From positions 1 through 6,304 of IMG/VR virus record IMGVR_UViG_3300017469_000047: a stretch of 6,304 nt of DNA, one strand, 5' to 3'. Below the pieces are notes generated by a model. The model saw nothing but the letters and a program-made list of their open reading frames with translations. It made no database searches and had not been told where the DNA came from. This document shows positions 1-5,861 of this stretch, one piece after another. Position numbers and translations under genes: made by a program. The stretch's first letter is position 1. Each line of letters opens with the position of its first letter.

Positions 1-23
1 CTTGGTGTGTGACCTTTTGCCAT
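1..23 (-). CDS. Rudivirus major capsid protein (SIRV2 gp26/ORF134-like), N-terminus only, truncated by window edge
   Basis: Reverse complement of 23..1 reads ATG GCA AAA GGT CAC ACA CCA AG = MAKGHTP(R), matching the recalled SIRV MCP start MAKGHTSR. Rudiviral context and an upstream TATA box support it. Only about 8 codons are visible. Confidence 0.85.
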
Positions 24-53
24 TTTTGGTCAAATACAATTATTATCTTCAAA

Positions 54-61
54 TATATAAA
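54..61 (-). promoter_or_regulatory. TATA box of capsid gene
   Basis: Minus-strand TTTATATA 31-38 nt upstream of the ATG at 23; no downstream GTC motif. Confidence 0.65.
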
Positions 62-72
62 AACTCACGTCT

Positions 73-153
73 TATACACAATATAACGTATATGCTATGT
101 TGCCATTGTTCTTCCTGTAGGAAATCAAGCCATATACATAATATAATGTATAT
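73..153. repeat. Two imperfect palindromic 21-bp direct repeats, 60-bp period
   Basis: 73-93 tatacacaatataacgtatat versus 133-153 tatacataatataatgtatat (19/21 identical). The second copy is a perfect dyad ATATACAT-N6-ATGTATAT (132-153). Confidence 0.75.
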
Positions 154-159
154 AGCATG

Positions 160-195
160 CCCTAATTGTTAACTAAATACCGATAATAATTAGGG
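160..195. repeat. 12-bp inverted repeat / hairpin
   Basis: ccctaattgtta (160-171) pairs with taataattaggg (184-195): 11 Watson-Crick pairs plus one G-U on the + strand, 12-nt loop. Confidence 0.7.
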
Positions 196-1174: not shown

Positions 1175-1336
1175 CTATTTCGCTTCTCTCTTCTGTAGGT
1201 ATTCAATCACTGCCTCCCGTATAACCTCTGTTAGTGTTGTATCATGCTCTGCACAATACCTTTTTAGCCTTATTTTTAAATTCCTATCTATATTAATACC
1301 GAAAACTACCTTTTCACTTTTGGGCTTTTCCGCCAT
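1175..1336 (-). CDS. svtR: SvtR-like ribbon-helix-helix transcriptional repressor (53 aa; not in ORF track)
   Basis: Hand translation MAEKPKSEKVVFGINIDRNLKIRLKRYCAEHDTTLTEVIREAVIEYLQKREAK matches the recalled SIRV1 ORF56b pattern VFGI..D..LK.RLK.YCA....LT..I.EA..EYLQKR. Confidence 0.92.
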   Translation of the reverse strand: MAEKPKSEKVVFGINIDRNLKIRLKRYCAEHDTTLTEVIREAVIEYLQKREAK

Positions 1337-1359
1337 TTTTGCTCATTCTATAAATACAT

Positions 1360-1377
1360 ATTATGACATATTTATAT
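1360..1377 (-). promoter_or_regulatory. svtR TATA-GTC promoter
   Basis: Minus strand ATATAAATATGTCATAAT, identical to 3467-3484 on the + strand. Confidence 0.75.
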
Positions 1378-1417
1378 GTTGTGATTTTTTGGGAAAAGTC
1401 TATTGTTAAATAAGTAA

Positions 1418-1612
1418 CTAATGGTGAAAACAATGACTCCATAAATCTACAAATATTCCAGTTGAAACTACAATATCTGCAATTGCAATAAATTTGACTA
1501 GAGAAATGTTAGTTGTAAAATACAAAATTATATTAAGCAAAATAATTATAAGTAAACCGTATAAATCATGAGTTTTTCCTTTTTTAAAATAAGAAAACAT
1601 ATTACAACTCAT
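1418..1612 (-). CDS. Small membrane protein with two predicted TM helices
   Basis: Basic N-terminus followed by hydrophobic stretches LYGLLIIILLNIILYFTT and LVKFIAIADIVVSTGIFV. It starts 2 nt after the upstream stop (alternative ATG 1600). Confidence 0.7.
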   Translation of the reverse strand: MSCNMFSYFKKGKTHDLYGLLIIILLNIILYFTTNISLVKFIAIADIVVSTGIFVDLWSHCFHH

Positions 1613-1614
1613 TC

Positions 1615-2313
1615 TTAAATTCCTATATATTTAAATATCTTTTTCTTTAACCAAGTTGTCTTAATAAAATTTCTAGGATTAGCAAAAGGTATTTTATGGT
1701 CAACTGTATATTTTTCAACTTTTTGAAGATATATTGGAAATGGAGCATTTAATACTGGAATTCCTGTCTCTATGGTATAAAGTGCTATTTCTGTTGGATT
1801 ATATTCAACAAAATATTCATTTGTTTCTTCTGGAAAAGTCGGAAAAACCTGATAAAAATTAGGTAAATTATTTGGTTGAGAAAATCCACATTCTTCCAAA
1901 ATAAGTTTCTTTTTTGCAGGAACATAAAAAACTCCTGCATAATTTATATTATTCTTAGAATCCTGAACTAAACCAACTCTATATGGCGTATCATAGTGAT
2001 AATTCAAATGTCTATTACCACTAGTTATAAAATTAATAACTCCTAATGCTTTATACACCTCAGTATAAAAATTCAAAAAAGCATAAGGTCTTACCAGCGG
2101 AGTTCCTCTAACTAACACAAAATCATAATCAAATGAAGAATTATTGTAAATTATCCAATTTAAGCAACTAGAAATTGCATTAAAATTTTCATAAGTTACG
2201 CCATAATTTAATCCTTGCACTTCCCTAGATAGTTTAACAGATTCATCTTGGTCAATGTCTAAAACTGAAAATTTAGGTTCTGTTCTTAATTGCTCTAATA
2301 ATGACTTTTCCAT
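1615..2313 (-). CDS. Hypothetical protein (~232 aa), aromatic-rich and probably beta-rich
   Basis: Long ORF in AT-rich DNA. ATG 2313 (MEKSLL...) lies 31 nt below a TATA-GTC element; the track's TTG start at 2337 falls within that promoter. Confidence 0.85.
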   Translation of the reverse strand: MEKSLLEQLRTEPKFSVLDIDQDESVKLSREVQGLNYGVTYENFNAISSCLNWIIYNNSSFDYDFVLVRGTPLVRPYAFLNFYTEVYKALGVINFITSGNRHLNYHYDTPYRVGLVQDSKNNINYAGVFYVPAKKKLILEECGFSQPNNLPNFYQVFPTFPEETNEYFVEYNPTEIALYTIETGIPVLNAPFPIYLQKVEKYTVDHKIPFANPRNFIKTTWLKKKIFKYIGI

Positions 2314-2324
2314 GATACTAAAAA

Positions 2325-2344
2325 AGCAACTTGACAATAATAAA
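2325..2344 (-). promoter_or_regulatory. TATA-GTC promoter of ORF232
   Basis: Minus strand TTTATTATTGTCAAGTTGCT. Confidence 0.65.
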
Positions 2345-2430
2345 CTTATTACGAAAAATGAAAGTATTTATATGTTGCTATTTTTTGCAGAAGGCTTATT
2401 ACTGAGTTTCTTTCTAAAAATAAAATTGAA

Positions 2431-2718
2431 ATGACTATAACTACAGATGCTTTGGATGGATTTCTAGTAATAATGGGTGTACTAATAGCTAGTTATGTTG
2501 TTGGCGAAGTTGTACATCTTTTCAATCAGAAGCAAAATAATGAAACTTTCCAAAATGCAATAAACGAGATGACAAAAAGTACAATTTCAGCAGTTGAAAG
2601 CATAAAAGATACTACAACACTTGGAATTAATTCATTATTAAATATGGATACATTAAGAGATGTAAATTCGTTAGCACAGAAAAAAGTTGAACAAAGTCAA
2701 CAAACACAAACTAAGTAA
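2431..2718 (+). CDS. Virus-associated pyramid protein PVAP (SIRV2 P98/gp49, STIV C92 family), virion egress
   Basis: N-terminal TM segment (GFLVIMGVLIASYVVGEVVHL) plus KST..A.ESIKDTT..GIN.LLNMDTLRDVNSLA, near-identical to the recalled SIRV2 P98 sequence. Confidence 0.95.
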   Translation: MTITTDALDGFLVIMGVLIASYVVGEVVHLFNQKQNNETFQNAINEMTKSTISAVESIKDTTTLGINSLLNMDTLRDVNSLAQKKVEQSQQTQTK

Positions 2719-2719
2719 T

Positions 2720-3064
2720 TTATTTTTTAGACTTAGCCATATAAGCTAATACTTTTTTTATATCATTTTTTGTTTTTGGAACTAATTGGATATTTATATC
2801 TGCATGAGTAGGCATTTTCTCATGAACTTTAAAATAATCCAATTTCTTATTAGTAAAATATAAAATATGATAATGTAAACCATGTGTTTTAGCAGTATAT
2901 TCCTTAACACTGAAAATATGTGAATTTCTATCATGTCCATGAGCATAATTCTTAAATTTCTGAAAAATTGGCGTAACCGAATTATATCGATAATTTGCGG
3001 CAATTGTAATAAAATAAGTGTAAGTGTATAAAAAGTGAAAGCTGAAAAGTTTTTGGCAGTCCAT
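2720..3064 (-). CDS. rep: HUH Rep nicking/joining endonuclease (SIRV1 ORF119 / SIRV2 gp16-like)
   Basis: Motif 1 YFITI, HUH motif GLHYHILYF, catalytic Tyr in YMAK (YxxK); size and context fit. Confidence 0.92.
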   Translation of the reverse strand: MDCQKLFSFHFLYTYTYFITIAANYRYNSVTPIFQKFKNYAHGHDRNSHIFSVKEYTAKTHGLHYHILYFTNKKLDYFKVHEKMPTHADINIQLVPKTKNDIKKVLAYMAKSKK

Positions 3065-3081
3065 GTCATCAATTAAAAATC

Positions 3082-3095
3082 TGACATTTAAATGT
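3082..3095 (-). promoter_or_regulatory. rep promoter (TATA-GTC within a perfect 12-bp palindrome)
   Basis: ACATTTAAATGT (3084-3095) is palindromic; minus strand TTTAAATGTCA begins 28 nt above ATG 3064. Confidence 0.6.
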
Positions 3096-3106
3096 ATATG
3101 GCACGT

Positions 3107-3114
3107 TTATATAT
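3107..3114 (+). promoter_or_regulatory. TATA box of tandem-RHH gene
   Basis: TTTATATA 29 nt upstream of ATG 3136 (leaderless spacing). Confidence 0.65.
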
Positions 3115-3135
3115 TTGTTGTAGGCATGTAAAACC

Positions 3136-3408
3136 ATGAAACAACAAAGGAATAAGTATATACAAATACGTATACCTTCAAAGCAAAAAAATCTTTTTTA
3201 TGAAAAACAAGACTTAATAAAGCAAGAAATCGAAAAAATAATAAATCAGCAAAAACCATTCAAAAGAATTGAAACAACAGACCCTTATGACGGAACAGTA
3301 AGTATTCCGATCGATGAACTATATTACGAAAAGTTAGAGGAATTAGCTAAAAAATATAATATTAAAGTTGGAAGTATAATAAGGTCTATATTCTTCGAAC
3401 TAAGTTAA
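3136..3408 (+). CDS. Putative tandem ribbon-helix-helix DNA-binding protein
   Basis: Two alternating-hydrophobic strands (KYIQIRIP and TVSIPID), each followed by helices. The second unit, EKLEELAKKYNIKVGSIIRSIF, is a canonical CopG/RHH pattern. Confidence 0.75.
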   Translation: MKQQRNKYIQIRIPSKQKNLFYEKQDLIKQEIEKIINQQKPFKRIETTDPYDGTVSIPIDELYYEKLEELAKKYNIKVGSIIRSIFFELS

Positions 3409-3410
3409 AT

Positions 3411-3433
3411 ATTTTTTTGTAAAGCTTTTTTTT
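3411..3433 (+). terminator. Oligo-T terminator
   Basis: T7 and T8 tracts immediately after the stop at 3408. Confidence 0.6.
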
Positions 3434-3465
3434 CTGTCAATGTGGCAAATTAGCAACTTGACAAA

Positions 3466-3504
3466 TATATAAATATGTCATAATGCATATTATAAATTGG
3501 GGAG
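3466..3504 (+). promoter_or_regulatory. gp17 promoter (TATA-GTC) and Shine-Dalgarno
   Basis: TATATAAATATGTCATAAT, then GGGGAG at 3499-3504 before GTG 3510. Confidence 0.7.
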
Positions 3505-3509
3505 AAAAG

Positions 3510-3911
3510 GTGTCATCCCTTAAAGAAATATTAGACGAGTTGGGAAAACAGGTAAAACAGACAAATAAAATAGCCTCAAGGGTTTTAAAAATTAAAGGCA
3601 TAAAGCGAATTGTAGTGCAACTAAATGCAATACCTCAGGATGGAAAAGTAAGATATTCATTAACTATACACAGCCAAAATAATTTCAGAAAACAACTTGG
3701 AATAACTGCCAATGACTCAGAGGACTTAAAATTAATCAGTGAATTCTTAGCAAAATATGCAGATTTGCTAAATGAATACGTAAGATACACACCAAGAAAT
3801 AACAATAGAATTGAAGAAGAAGAGCTAAATATGGAAGAAAATGAAGAAAACGAAAAAGAAGAACAAAAACCAAAAAGGATGAGTAAAAGAAACGTGGAGG
3901 AAGAATTTTAA
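3510..3911 (+). CDS. ssDNA-binding protein (SIRV2 gp17/ORF131b-like)
   Basis: SLKEI.DELGKQ...IKGIKRIVVQLNA.PQDGK.RYSLTIHSQNNFRKQ and an acidic tail ending VEEEF, as recalled for gp17. GTG start chosen from the SD site and homolog length. Confidence 0.93.
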   Translation: MSSLKEILDELGKQVKQTNKIASRVLKIKGIKRIVVQLNAIPQDGKVRYSLTIHSQNNFRKQLGITANDSEDLKLISEFLAKYADLLNEYVRYTPRNNNRIEEEELNMEENEENEKEEQKPKRMSKRNVEEEF

Positions 3912-3925
3912 ATTGTCATAAGACA
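3906..3925 (+). promoter_or_regulatory. Internal TATA-GTC promoter for the ATPase gene
   Basis: TTTTAAATTGTCATAAGACA overlaps the gp17 stop; first T is 31 nt above GTG 3937; contains mini-dyad TGTC-ataa-GACA. Confidence 0.55.
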
Positions 3926-3936
3926 TTATTTTTTTT

Positions 3937-5244
3937 GTGGACAGTTCAGCCCAACTCTTGGATAAAGTTAAATCTCACTCTTTTTTTTATAATCCACGTG
4001 ATACTGAAAGAATTTTAAATATTATCTTAGGAGGGAAACAAATCGAAGAACAGAAAAAAAATGAAATTTTAAAGGCTTATAAAAGGGGAATTGACCACCA
4101 ATATTTTTCAGCAAATCTGCCATATTATGATGAAATAAAATTTATCTCGAAAATTACACAATTTAAAGTTAAAAACGATGAAATAATAGCAAGATTTCAA
4201 AATGGTTTTATCTCAAGTTTTGACCCTCACCAAATTGCAGATAATCCGGATGACTTTTATAATTTAATAAGTAGTTATATGTTTGTTAAAATCAAAAAAG
4301 GAGTTGGAAATTGGTATATATCGGATATCTATTCAATTGAACCACCAAATAATTACGAAATTGCAAAAGAGTTGTTTGAATTAGCGAATTCAGAAAAACA
4401 AACATGGGCTTTATTACTTCAAGCTTTTGGTTTTGACCCATTAAAAATGGAAGTAAGTGATATGTATTTAACTCTGCAAAGGCTATTTCCATTATTTAAA
4501 TCCCCAATTACAAAAAGACAAATAAATTACATTGAAATTTCCAACAGGGGAACTGGAAAAACTACAACTTTCATGATTTTACAAGAAGTATTTAACTTTA
4601 GATATTACACCGAGTCACCAACTTATGCAAATTTAATATATGATGCAAGAAATAATATGTATGGGGCTGTATTTTTGTCAAATGGATTGATTTTTGATGA
4701 AATACAAAATTGGAAAGAGGGATTTTCAGCAAAAGAATTAGGTTCAATTAACGCAACTTTATCAACTGGTTTAGAAAATTGTGTTTGGACTAGGGGGGCA
4801 GGAACAGAATCCAGGTCTTCTACTATACAAAAATGTATTCCAATTATTTACGCCGGAAATCCATATTCCCTAACAATAAACAGGTTAGCAATGCCCGACT
4901 TAGAAGACTATCTAGCAAACTATGAAATATTTACCCCTGCAATTTTGGACAGAATTCATATTATCCAAATAGCAGTTAAAAAGACCTATGAGAAAATTAT
5001 AAACGGAAGAGTATTATATCCATCAATTTTAAGGGCATTAGTTGAATTAATACAACAGAAAATAAATACTATAAATAATTATATAACATGTGATAATTTG
5101 GAATCAAGAAGACAAGAACAAAGCATAGATATCCAAATATTATTACAGGCTTTTGATATAGATTTACAATTTGGCAAAAAGACCAATGAGGAAATATGCA
5201 ATCAAATGATAAACTTTATGCGATATAGTAATTTAGGGGGATAA
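3937..5244 (+). CDS. AAA+ ssDNA-annealing ATPase (SIRV2 gp18/ORF436-like)
   Basis: Walker [10 protein letters not shown], Walker B LIFDE, sensor-1 YAGN, Arg finger AILDR; 435 aa, lying between gp17 and the nuclease. Confidence 0.93.
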
Positions 5245-5246
5245 AA

Positions 5247-5861
5247 ATGAATTATGAGGAATTTGTAAAACAGAGTTTTAAGATAAAATACGATGAAAAT
5301 ACAATATTCCCTAGTGAAATTGGAATATGCTTTAGAAAAAGCTATTTCAGTAGGAAATTTGAATTTGAAAAAGGAATTAATGAACTAGTTTTGGATTTAG
5401 GTGAACAACATCATGAAAGAATTGAAAATTACTTTGTTGAAAAATTAAATTGTAAAAGTGAAGTTGAAGTAAAGGGGGTGATTGAGGGTATTAACATATC
5501 AGGAAGAATAGATTTATTTTGCGGAAACGACTTAATTGAAATAAAGACAATCTCAAATAACTATTTCCAAATAAAAGACTACCATCTTTATCAAGTTGCA
5601 ATATATTATTATTTACTCCAACACCAAGATTACAAAATCGATAACATCTATATTATATACTTAAATAGAATAAATAGGGAAGTTAAACAATTTCTAATAG
5701 ATAGAAAAATAATGGATGAATATATACAAAAAGCAATTGACTGGATAAAGAAGTTTAAAGAATATATAAAGATGGAGGATTATAAAAATATACCGCCTGT
5801 AAATTCATATCTTTGTAAGAATTGTGAATTTAAAGGAAAATGTTACGGTAAACTATTATAA
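5247..5861 (+). CDS. cas4: Cas4-like RecB-family ssDNA nuclease (SIRV2 gp19/ORF207-like)
   Basis: GRID...IEIKT and QVAIY RecB motifs; Fe-S ligand pattern C28 plus C190/C193/C199; G-rich SD upstream, 2 nt after the ATPase stop. Confidence 0.95.

What the first reader, a model, noticed from the sequence alone, without database searches (positions are those of the whole stretch)
1175..2344. Uncharacterised ORF232 + 2-TM protein cassette between the pyramid gene and svtR: candidate anti-defence or envelope module
Seen: a coupled two-gene unit (2-nt gap) with its own TATA-GTC promoter, divergent from PVAP and followed by a co-oriented small RHH gene. Recalled: in SIRV2 the gene adjacent to PVAP (gp48) is the similarly sized anti-CRISPR AcrIIIB1, but I see no sequence similarity to it. 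Inference: a different cargo in that slot, such as a new anti-defence protein, superinfection exclusion via the membrane protein, or an egress accessory.
Basis: inference. Interest (0 to 1): 0.6.

Follow-up and report, generated by a model that had tools for sequence, protein, structure and literature searches.

The report
Linked beta-sandwich and membrane-hairpin accessory genes
Between the pyramid (egress) gene and the svtR regulator of this hot-spring rudivirus sits a roughly 1-kb add-on of two genes that travel together in related viruses, a soluble beta-sandwich protein and a tiny membrane protein with a cysteine/histidine cluster; both are real and conserved, but what they do is still unknown.

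Summary
On the minus strand lie ORF232 (1615-2313), a 64-aa two-pass membrane protein (1418-1612, 2-nt gap) and an SvtR orthologue (1175-1336), all divergent from PVAP (2431-2718). ORF232 has a TATA-GTC element 19 nt before its ATG.

New findings:
- ORF232+TM is a ~1-kb indel relative to SIRV11, where PVAP abuts svtR. It is bracketed by a duplicated 36-nt svtR promoter segment.
- ORF232 is a non-secreted Ig-like beta-sandwich from a tiny family restricted to Ligamenvirales (PHROG 6678). No Pfam, PDB or AcrIIIB1 similarity was found.
- The 64-aa gene is the short form of the AFV2-ORF202 membrane family (PHROG 26913). Its closest relatives encode a 188-aa, ~6-helix version. Cys, His and Asp residues are invariant.
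- The two genes stay adjacent in three arrangements, are absent together from SIRV10, and in SIRV11 share a promoter core found only twice in that genome. Both are under purifying selection.
- Adjacency to PVAP is not conserved. The SFV1 homologue is not a virion protein, and no homologue is among published predicted anti-defence genes.

Most likely this is a dispensable, membrane-associated host-interaction module. Its function, whether superinfection exclusion, anti-defence or something else, remains untested.

The parts
1615..2313 (-). ORF232: non-secreted Ig/FnIII-like beta-sandwich protein with a basic C-terminal helix. Member of the Ligamenvirales-only family PHROG 6678 (SFV1 ORF28-205, SIFV0066, SIRV11 ORF42, SMRV1 orf32).
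   Evidence: phrog_6678 E 1.7e-13; no Pfam. AF2 pLDDT 86.7, pTM 0.85. BFVD matches to SFV1 and SBRV1 proteins, E 1e-15 and 3e-14; best PDB Z 6.4, generic beta-sandwiches; only 30 representatives among 1.84e9 proteins; dN/dS 0.19-0.30.
1418..1612 (-). 64-aa two-pass membrane hairpin. Short form of the AFV2-ORF202 / PHROG 26913 family, with invariant C3, K13, H15, D16, D56, W58, H60, C61 and H64 (motifs GK.HDLYG and DLW.HCFHH). Translationally coupled to ORF232 by a 2-nt gap.
   Evidence: phrog_26913 E 3e-23, matching profile positions 140-202 of 202. (alignments). (188-aa long form in L015-L026). (hydropathy; dN/dS 0.05-0.20).
2333..2344 (-). Proximal TATA-like box plus GTC element of ORF232. 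The GTC ends 19 nt before the ATG, which suggests a leaderless or short-leader transcript.
   Evidence: The same element is conserved in L015, L018 and L021.
2365..2400 (-). Copy 1 of the 36-nt direct repeat: the BRE/TATA segment homologous to the svtR promoter of SIRV11. It lies in the PVAP|ORF232 spacer, and its TATA (2365-2373) may also serve PVAP on the other strand (inference).
   Evidence: repeat D1, 78% identity, 996 nt spacing. (alignment A7 with the SIRV11 PVAP|svtR spacer).
1365..1404 (-). Copy 2 of the repeat (1369-1404) together with svtR's own TATA-GTC promoter (1376->1365).
1175..1336 (-). svtR orthologue: a 53-aa ribbon-helix-helix repressor. It flanks the module and is co-oriented with it.
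   Evidence: PF21432 E 2.9e-11, above cutoff. (PDB 2KEL, SIRV1 protein 56B, E 1e-12). The ORF232->TM->RHH trio is conserved in L007 and L015-L026.
2431..2718 (+). PVAP (pyramid-forming egress protein). Divergent neighbour and the other boundary of the slot.
   Evidence: phrog_8367 E 3.8e-49. (86% identity to SIRV11 gp10).

Best explanation
ORF232 and the 64-aa membrane protein form one accessory two-gene module of Ligamenvirales. In this virus the module sits inside a duplicated svtR promoter between PVAP and svtR.

Shown:
- Both are real genes under purifying selection.
- The module is an indel relative to SIRV11.
- The two gene families are kept next to each other in three different arrangements, are missing together from SIRV10, and in SIRV11 carry a promoter core that is unique to them.
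- ORF232 folds as a non-secreted Ig-like beta-sandwich with a few family-wide invariant polar and aromatic residues (N57, R69, Y77, Y87, E141).
- The membrane protein is the last two helices of a ~190-aa polytopic viral protein and keeps an invariant Cys/His/Asp cluster.

Inferred:
- By the positive-inside rule, both ends of the hairpin face the cytoplasm, so C3/H15/D16 and D56/H60/C61/H63/H64 would form a cytoplasm-facing metal (probably Zn) site at the membrane surface.
- The beta-sandwich, which usually ends in a basic amphipathic helix, works at the inner face of the host membrane together with this hairpin.
- Because the module is dispensable, mobile, non-structural and lies among host-interaction genes in other rudiviruses, I take it to be a host-envelope-directed accessory function.
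- The most likely function is blocking or altering a membrane-associated host process, such as pilus-dependent entry of competing viruses (superinfection exclusion). It is less likely a soluble anti-CRISPR or a helper of PVAP.
For: - Gene reality and constraint.
- Indel and duplicated promoter.
- Linkage: co-oriented with a 0-4 nt gap or overlap in the window and L015-L026, and with small gaps (up to 75 nt) in L007, L008 and L044. Convergent and 22 nt apart in SIRV4-8, SIRV11 and L027-L036. TM->ORF220 in SMRV1. Both within 2.3 kb on the same strand in AFV2.
- Joint absence in SIRV10, where the TGT-like gene is followed directly by the gp44 homologue.
- The SIRV11 promoter core TAATTTTTTAAT(T)GTCAT occurs exactly twice in 33 kb, once upstream of each gene.
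- ORF232 fold and absence of a signal peptide or TM segment.
- Family-wide invariant residues.
- C-terminal amphipathic helix in 14 of 23 family members.
- TM motifs and the long form.
- Other ORF232-family genes also have small membrane-protein neighbours of unrelated families (SBFV2, L040, L042).
- Non-structural: SFV1 ORF28 is not among the 8 virion proteins found by MS (PMC6105669).
- Variable genes in SIRVs are proposed to drive host interaction (PMC5454432).
Against: - No direct evidence of binding. The complex prediction gave no verdict.
- No expression data.
- Topology and metal binding are inferred from sequence only.
- The window's own C-terminal helix is only moderately amphipathic (muH 0.45, mid-range for the protein).
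- Linkage is not universal. ARV2/ARV3 have the TM gene without an ORF232 relative. SFV1, SIFV and SBFV have ORF232 relatives without the HCFHH TM gene.
- Nothing here ties the module specifically to pili, entry or any defined host target.
Confidence: 0.35

Rival explanations
1. Anti-defence module: ORF232, with or without the membrane protein, inhibits a host immune system (CRISPR type I-A/I-D/III-B, toxin-antitoxin or other), with the neighbouring SvtR-like RHH acting as its Aca-like regulator.
For: - Variable, mobile genes.
- In usarudiviruses the module lies in the terminal variable region, about 1.2 kb from the AcrIIIB1 homologue gp45 and near Aca8 gp47.
- In SMRV1 it lies next to the SvtR-like 'ADa' gene gp34 and predicted anti-defence genes gp35-37.
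- In the window, ORF232 carries a copy of the svtR promoter segment.
- An RHH gene is close by in three lineages: the window clade, SFV1 and SMRV1.
Against: - No family member is listed among 354 predicted anti-defence genes, although SIRV11, SIRV8, SMRV1, SIFV and ARV2/3 were analysed (PMC11065993).
- No similarity to AcrIIIB1 and no hit in PADLOC.
- Strong purifying selection and conservation across rudivirus genera and into AFV2, which is unusual for fast-evolving Acrs.
- It is a two-gene operon with an integral membrane partner, whereas the four archaeal Acrs named in PMC11065993 are described there as small, mostly single genes.
Confidence: 0.2
2. Membrane enzyme or channel: the ORF202-family protein is a metal-dependent membrane enzyme or an ion (proton/metal) channel ('viroporin'). 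ORF232 is its substrate-binding or regulatory subunit, for example a glycan-binding beta-sandwich acting in glycosylation or lipid modification.
For: - Invariant C, K, H, D and W residues, plus acidic/aromatic motifs (SM.LED.FYW, WYYPV, IP..D..E) in the long form, look like an active site or pore.
- The ORF232 invariants (W, N, R, Y, E) resemble a carbohydrate-binding patch. The weak structural neighbours are Ig-like and CBM domains of glycosidases.
- In SBFV2 the homologue is followed, after a 6-nt gap, by a nucleotide-sugar epimerase gene, and glycosyltransferase genes lie nearby in several genomes.
Against: - No sequence or fold match to any enzyme or channel family.
- The short form lacks the whole N-terminal domain with its motifs, yet is retained under the strongest constraint in many lineages.
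- Glycosyltransferases are common in these genomes, so proximity may be chance.
Confidence: 0.15
3. Egress accessory: the pair assists or times PVAP pyramid formation or opening.
For: - Immediate divergent neighbour of PVAP here and in L015-L017 and L021.
- One product is a small membrane protein.
- ARV2/ARV3, which lack a recognisable PVAP (bioRxiv 10.1101/2020.01.16.907410), carry the TM gene.
Against: - PVAP is absent at this junction in L018-L020 and L007, although the module is present there.
- In L008, L044, SMRV1 and the usarudiviruses the module is far from PVAP.
- SIRV1, SIRV2 and SIRV10 lack both genes, going by their absence from the tblastn hit lists and a whole-genome profile search for SIRV10.
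- From my own knowledge, PVAP alone is sufficient to form pyramids in heterologous hosts.
- The TM protein matches no holin family.
Confidence: 0.07
4. Minor virion or envelope component.
For: - ARV3's TM orthologue is annotated 'putative viral structural protein'.
- SFV1 ORF28 lies among VP genes.
- The Ig-like fold is common in virion decoration and adhesion proteins.
Against: - SFV1 ORF28 was not detected in purified virions by LC-MS/MS (PMC6105669).
- Rudivirus virions are non-enveloped, so an integral membrane protein is an unlikely component.
- The genes are variable even among close relatives.
- The basis of the ARV3 annotation could not be traced.
Confidence: 0.07

Closest known systems
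SFV1 ORF28-205 / SIFV0066 / SIRV11 ORF42 / SMRV1 orf32 (PHROG 6678, uncharacterised)
   Same: Homologous over about 150-200 residues (hhalign 97.5-98%; tblastn 27-31% identity). The predicted fold is the same as SFV1 ORF28 and an SBRV1 protein (TM-score 0.69-0.78). The invariant N, R, Y, E and G positions are shared.
   Different: The window protein belongs to a distinct subclade (44-86% identity within it) that has an ..LEECGFS.. motif and sits next to PVAP/svtR. No member has a known function.
AFV2 ORF202 family of viral membrane proteins (PHROG 26913)
   Same: The 64-aa protein aligns with the last ~63 residues, with identical GK.HDLYG and DLW.HCFHH motifs.
   Different: It lacks the ~125-residue N-terminal four-helix domain found in AFV2 and in the window's closest relatives. 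The same truncation is seen in SIRV4-11, SMRV1, ARV2/3, L007, L008 and L044. Function is unknown and no fold match was found.
AcrIIIB1 (SIRV2 gp48; SIRV11 gp45)
   Same: Similar length. It is a variable gene near PVAP in SIRV2, and in SIRV11 it lies about 1.2 kb from that virus's copy of the ORF232/TM module.
   Different: No detectable sequence relationship (hhalign probability 0.05%, E 0.79). AcrIIIB1 is a single gene with the early regulatory motif. ORF232 is the first gene of a two-gene unit with a membrane partner.
Superinfection-exclusion / membrane-acting accessory proteins of phages (analogy only)
   Same: A small integral membrane protein plus a partner, dispensable and variably present in otherwise syntenic genomes.
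   Different: No homology to any such protein, and no functional data. This is an analogy from general knowledge, not a tested membership.

Membership tests
PHROG 6678 (ORF232 family) | Significant profile match over most of the protein | tested here: met
   phrog_6678 E 1.7e-13, residues 40-208. hhalign 97.5-98% to SIRV11 ORF42 and SMRV1 orf32.
PHROG 6678 (ORF232 family) | Shared predicted fold with family members | tested here: met
   Foldseek BFVD: SFV1 protein E 1.4e-15 (TM 0.69/0.78); SBRV1 protein E 2.6e-14.
AFV2 ORF202 / PHROG 26913 membrane protein family | C-terminal two-helix module with GK.HDLYG and DLW.HCFHH motifs | tested here: met
   phrog_26913 E 3.1e-23, profile positions 140-202. 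Alignments A2, A5 and A6.
AFV2 ORF202 / PHROG 26913 membrane protein family | N-terminal ~125-aa polytopic domain (SM.LED.FYW, WYYPV motifs) | tested here: not met
   Absent from the window. The ORF starts at the module boundary, and 372 nt are missing relative to L015. The window therefore carries a 'short form'.
AcrIIIB1 anti-CRISPR | Sequence homology to SIRV2 gp48 / SIRV11 gp45 | tested here: not met
   hhalign probability 0.05%, E 0.79.
AcrIIIB1 anti-CRISPR | Inhibition of type III-B interference | not testable with these tools
   Needs an infection or interference assay.
Predicted archaeal-virus anti-defence genes (regulatory-sequence method, PMC11065993) | Single gene (not in an operon) preceded by a strong BRE/TATA promoter whose flanking regulatory sequence is shared with other genes of the same genome | tested here: inconclusive
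   ORF232 heads a two-gene unit, so the 'single gene' criterion is not met. It does share a 36-nt promoter segment with svtR. Only 6.3 kb of the genome is available, so the genome-wide motif cannot be derived. Homologues in the analysed genomes are not listed.
SvtR (PF21432, 56B-like RHH), for the flanking gene 1175-1336 | RHH fold and sequence match above the curated threshold | tested here: met
   43.5 bits against a cutoff of 27.2. PDB 2KEL E 1e-12.
SvtR (PF21432, 56B-like RHH), for the flanking gene 1175-1336 | Published operator consensus in its own or the ORF232 promoter | tested here: inconclusive
   17 matches with up to 3 mismatches against 8.2 expected. None lies in either promoter. 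The consensus is putative and the DNA is AT-rich.
Holins / lysis membrane proteins | Profile match to a holin family | tested here: not met
   No holin hit for the 64-aa protein in PHROGs or Pfam. The weak holin hit (E 0.011) belongs to PVAP.
Ig/FnIII-like beta-sandwich fold | Structural match to solved beta-sandwich domains | tested here: inconclusive
   Best VIA Z 6.4 (76 aligned residues, rmsd 3.0). Many unrelated sandwiches score Z 4.5-6 and Foldseek PDB gives nothing at E<=0.001. This shows the general architecture only.

The most novel reading that the evidence does not exclude
The beta-sandwich protein and the Cys/His membrane hairpin together form a previously unrecognised, Ligamenvirales-specific, membrane-anchored counter-defence or superinfection-exclusion system. 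A Zn-binding two-helix hairpin recruits an Ig-like effector to the inner face of the host membrane, and the module moves between genome sites by recombination at shared promoter elements.
Probability: 0.25. Interest if true: 0.7.

Novelty: new member of a known kind. Interest (0 to 1): 0.38.

Why it matters
Most genes of crenarchaeal viruses have no known function, and their variable genes are thought to drive the arms race with the host. This work turns two anonymous ORFs into a defined unit that can be tested. The unit has clear boundaries, a conserved partner relationship, a confident fold for one protein and a short list of invariant residues in both.

It also identifies a membrane-protein family shared between Rudiviridae and a lipothrixvirus (AFV2). 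[quoted passage not shown] The TM gene is missing from the annotation of several reference genomes.

If the module proves to act on entry or immunity at the membrane, it would be a new type of archaeal virus-host interaction factor.

Tried and rejected
- Complex prediction of ORF232 with the 64-aa protein: no verdict, score 0.00. This is not evidence either way.
- AFV2 ORF202 as a 'Rosetta-stone' fusion of ORF232 and TM: rejected. Its N-terminal domain is a membrane domain unrelated to ORF232.
- AFV2 ORF208 and ORF286b and ARV3 ORF21-173 as diverged ORF232 relatives: rejected.
- SFV1 ORF27-60 as a TM partner: rejected, not a membrane protein.
- AcrIIIB1 homology: rejected.
- Pfam, NCBIfam, PADLOC and PDB sequence searches gave nothing for ORF232 or either TM form.
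- Foldseek PDB, Atlas and VIA searches of the long TM model returned only generic helical hairpins, Z<8.
- Atlas search for ORF232: no usable hit. The Atlas's own model is poor, pLDDT 0.31.
- A weak hit of the ORF232 profile to a 505-aa protein with a Hint domain (E 1e-4) was judged a marginal beta-sandwich match and was not pursued.
- SvtR operator scan: uninformative.
- Sequencing runs: one DNA run holds 11% of the sampled words and no RNA run holds the sequence.
- The basis of ARV3's 'putative viral structural protein' label could not be traced, because no supplement is held.
- No alternative genetic code was used.
Full report
WHAT IS IN THE WINDOW

The 6,304-nt window is a fragment of a rudivirus from IMG/VR. 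From 2358 to 5849 it is collinear, at about 78% nucleotide identity, with the Yellowstone usarudiviruses SIRV4-11. That stretch holds PVAP, a 117-like protein, an RHH-like ORF90, a PHA01746-like protein, a BrxL-like ATPase and a Cas4-like nuclease. The region of the finding has no close DNA match in annotated phage records.

- ORF232 runs from the ATG at 2313 to the stop at 1615-1617 on the minus strand. All orthologues begin at the same MEK/MQK position, so the upstream TTG (240 aa) is not the start.
- Two nucleotides after its stop, a 64-aa ORF with two hydrophobic helices begins (1612->1418).
- A TATA-like box followed by GTC lies at 2344->2333, 19 nt before the ATG. It is conserved in orthologous loci.
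- PVAP (2431-2718, +) is divergent from ORF232 and is unambiguous (PHROG 8367, E 4e-49).
- The downstream co-oriented 53-aa gene (1336->1175) is a true SvtR orthologue (PF21432 above threshold; PDB 2KEL E 1e-12). It has its own TATA-GTC promoter.
- Against orthologues, dN/dS is 0.19-0.30 for ORF232 and 0.05-0.20 for the membrane module, so both are constrained genes.

THE UNIT IS AN INDEL INSIDE A DUPLICATED PROMOTER

In SIRV11 the SvtR-like gene gp11 abuts PVAP gp10 directly. In the window, a 36-nt direct repeat (1369-1404 and 2365-2400, 78% identical, 996 nt apart) brackets ORF232 plus the TM gene.

Alignment A7 shows how the two spacers relate to SIRV11:
- The window's PVAP|ORF232 spacer is collinear with the SIRV11 PVAP|svtR spacer up to and including the TATA box. 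It then diverges into sequence specific to ORF232, which carries the proximal TATA-GTC.
- The window's TM|svtR spacer carries the second copy of the same BRE/TATA segment, followed by the rest of the svtR promoter.

So the ~1-kb module was either inserted at the svtR promoter or lost from it by recombination between the copies.

ORF232

- It has no Pfam, NCBIfam, PADLOC or PDB sequence match. It belongs to PHROG 6678, of unknown function.
- An exhaustive profile search of 1.84 billion representative proteins finds only 30 at E<=1e-3. The named ones are from Ligamenvirales (SBFV3 gp40, SSRV2 ORF55) or from hot-spring MAG contigs.
- tblastn and profile comparison add SFV1 ORF28-205, SBFV1/2, SIFV0066, SIFV2 gp61, usarudiviral ORF42/ORF53, SMRV1 orf32 and an AFV2 gene.
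- AlphaFold2 with a 27-sequence alignment gives a confident model (pLDDT 86.7, pTM 0.85). It has a short N-terminal strand and helix, a beta-sandwich core and a C-terminal helix.
- The only strong structural matches are uncharacterised SFV1 and SBRV1 proteins. Against the PDB there are only generic Ig/FnIII/CBM-like sandwiches (best Z 6.4).
- There is no signal peptide or TM segment.
- Across the divergent family, the invariant residues are N57, R69, Y77, F79, Y87, E141 and G143. W53, F129, F144, Y179 and P193 are nearly invariant. This polar/aromatic set fits a ligand- or partner-binding patch.
- A basic amphipathic C-terminal helix recurs in 14 of 23 members, but it is only moderate in the window protein.
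- There is no relationship to AcrIIIB1.

THE 64-AA PROTEIN

- It matches only the last 63 positions of PHROG 26913, a 202-position profile.
- In the window's closest relatives (seven IMG/VR contigs, L015-L026), the gene after ORF232 encodes 188 aa. That protein is homologous along its full length to AFV2 ORF202 and is modelled with about six helices.
- The window lacks 372 nt (124 codons) of this gene. Its ORF starts exactly at the module boundary.
- The same short form, starting at the same position, occurs in SIRV4-8, SIRV11, SMRV1, ARV2, ARV3, L007, L008 and L044. The two-helix module is therefore an independent functional unit.
- Invariant residues are C3, F9, G12, K13, H15, D16, Y18, G19, D56, L57, W58, H60, C61, F62 and H64.
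- The lysine-rich N-terminal segment and the short inter-helix loop predict an N-in/C-in topology. That would put the Cys/His/Asp residues of both ends together on the cytoplasmic face. I infer a metal (Zn-type) site, but this is untested.
- No fold or family match exists. The Atlas cluster is virus-only.
[quoted passage not shown] This family is an exception.

THE TWO GENES ARE FUNCTIONALLY LINKED

- They are adjacent and co-oriented in the window clade, across three different flanking contexts (PVAP/svtR; no PVAP; Hjc).
- They are adjacent but convergent, 22 nt apart, in the usarudiviruses.
- They are adjacent in the reverse order in SMRV1.
- They lie 2.3 kb apart on one strand in AFV2.
- SIRV10 lacks both: its TGT-like gene is followed directly by the gp44 homologue.
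- In SIRV11 the 17-18-nt promoter core TAATTTTTTAAT(T)GTCAT occurs exactly twice in 33,356 nt, once upstream of each gene. This argues for co-regulation even where the genes are transcribed separately.
- The link is not absolute. ARV2/3 have only the TM gene. SFV1, SIFV and SBFV have only the ORF232 family.
- Some of those ORF232 relatives abut small membrane proteins of other families: SBFV2 ORF14-65, the L040 65-aa protein and the L042 83-aa protein.

WHAT IT IS PROBABLY NOT

- Not core: it is absent from the SIRV1, SIRV2, SIRV9 and SIRV10 hit lists.
- Not a detected virion protein: SFV1 ORF28 is not among VP1-VP8 (PMC6105669).
- Not tied to PVAP: PVAP is missing at this junction in L018-L020 and L007, and elsewhere the module is far from PVAP.
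- Not among the 354 anti-defence genes predicted from regulatory sequences, although several carrier genomes were analysed (PMC11065993).

Even so, the module's neighbours are typical host-interaction territory. In usarudiviruses they include AcrIIIB1 gp45 and Aca8 gp47. In SMRV1 they include the SvtR-like 'ADa' gp34 and the predicted anti-defence genes gp35-37.

MECHANISM (INFERRED)

I read the unit as a dispensable, membrane-associated, two-component accessory module. The hairpin would provide a membrane anchor with a cytoplasm-facing metal site, and the beta-sandwich would work with it at the inner membrane face. The most likely role is interference with a membrane-associated host process.

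- Superinfection exclusion is my first choice (0.35).
- A membrane-linked anti-defence function is the main rival (0.2).
- A membrane enzyme or channel with ORF232 as its binding subunit comes next (0.15).
- Egress helper and virion component are unlikely (about 0.07 each).

None of these could be tested here. The complex prediction gave no verdict and there are no RNA data.

NOVELTY AND VERDICT

Both proteins are members of catalogued but uncharacterised viral families, so this is a new member of a known kind. What is new is the anatomy: the pairing of the two families, the long and short forms of the membrane protein, the invariant Cys/His cluster, and the indel bounded by a duplicated promoter. 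Interest is moderate. Its 'cargo in a slot' reading is supported, and the specific functional guesses remain open.

Noticed in passing
NC_034624.1 (SIRV11) 28826-29017(-) = L002:4111-4302; likewise in SIRV4, 5, 6, 7 and OM401712-14: The conserved 64-aa HCFHH membrane ORF is not annotated in these GenBank/RefSeq records (tblastn reports 'none' under the match). Metagenome gene callers also missed it in L008 (963-1172) and L044 (5020-5223).
   Followed up: partly
L018, L019, L020 (about 3790-4000) and L007 (9778-10000): These close relatives have no PVAP gene at the 117-like|ORF232 junction where the window, L015-L017 and L021 have one. PVAP may lie elsewhere or be absent, as reported for ARV1-3 and MRV1.
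   Followed up: partly
L002:1172-3300 (SIRV11 gp40-gp41); L003; L039: Usarudiviruses carry an 'amino acid permease' gene followed by a 'queuine tRNA-ribosyltransferase' (TGT-like) gene, immediately upstream of their copy of the ORF232/TM module. The pair remains in SIRV10, which lacks the module. It could be a nucleobase-modification module. This rests on annotation only.
   Followed up: no
window 1175-1336 (-): Besides its clear SvtR match, the RHH protein has a weak sub-threshold hit to the aCcr1 cell-cycle-regulator family (NCBIfam NF053762, E 1.6e-4, 21.5 bits against a cutoff of 60).
   Followed up: no
window 3136-3408 (+): ORF90 (PHROG 11115) has weak RHH/Arc-repressor-like hits in its C-terminal half. 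By eye it resembles an ARV2 gene listed as a predicted anti-defence gene / putative transcriptional regulator in PMC11065993 Supplementary Data 1. I did not align them.
   Followed up: no
window 3937-5244 (+): The conserved 435-aa rudiviral protein (PHROG 6542, labelled 'protease') matches the BrxL-like ATPase domain of the Lon-like BREX protein (PF13337, E 1.7e-13).
   Followed up: no
window 6-160: The non-coding-looking left end contains two similar ~22-nt AT-rich segments (about 74-95 and 133-155). Window 6-97 matches SIRV1 11067-11159 at 86%, and 132-546 matches SIRV10 at 87% (ORF113 homologue).
   Followed up: no
window 1269-1298 and 1608-1637: A 30-nt direct repeat (83% identical) links the inside of svtR with the ORF232-stop/TM-start junction. 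It is probably a chance similarity in AT-rich DNA, but it lies at the site where 372 nt of the TM gene are missing relative to L015.
   Followed up: no
L012:2483-3579 (SFV1); L005:2986-4550 (SMRV1): As in the window clade, an RHH-regulator gene lies within one or two genes of the ORF232-family gene in SFV1 (ORF26-101) and SMRV1 (orf34).
   Followed up: partly
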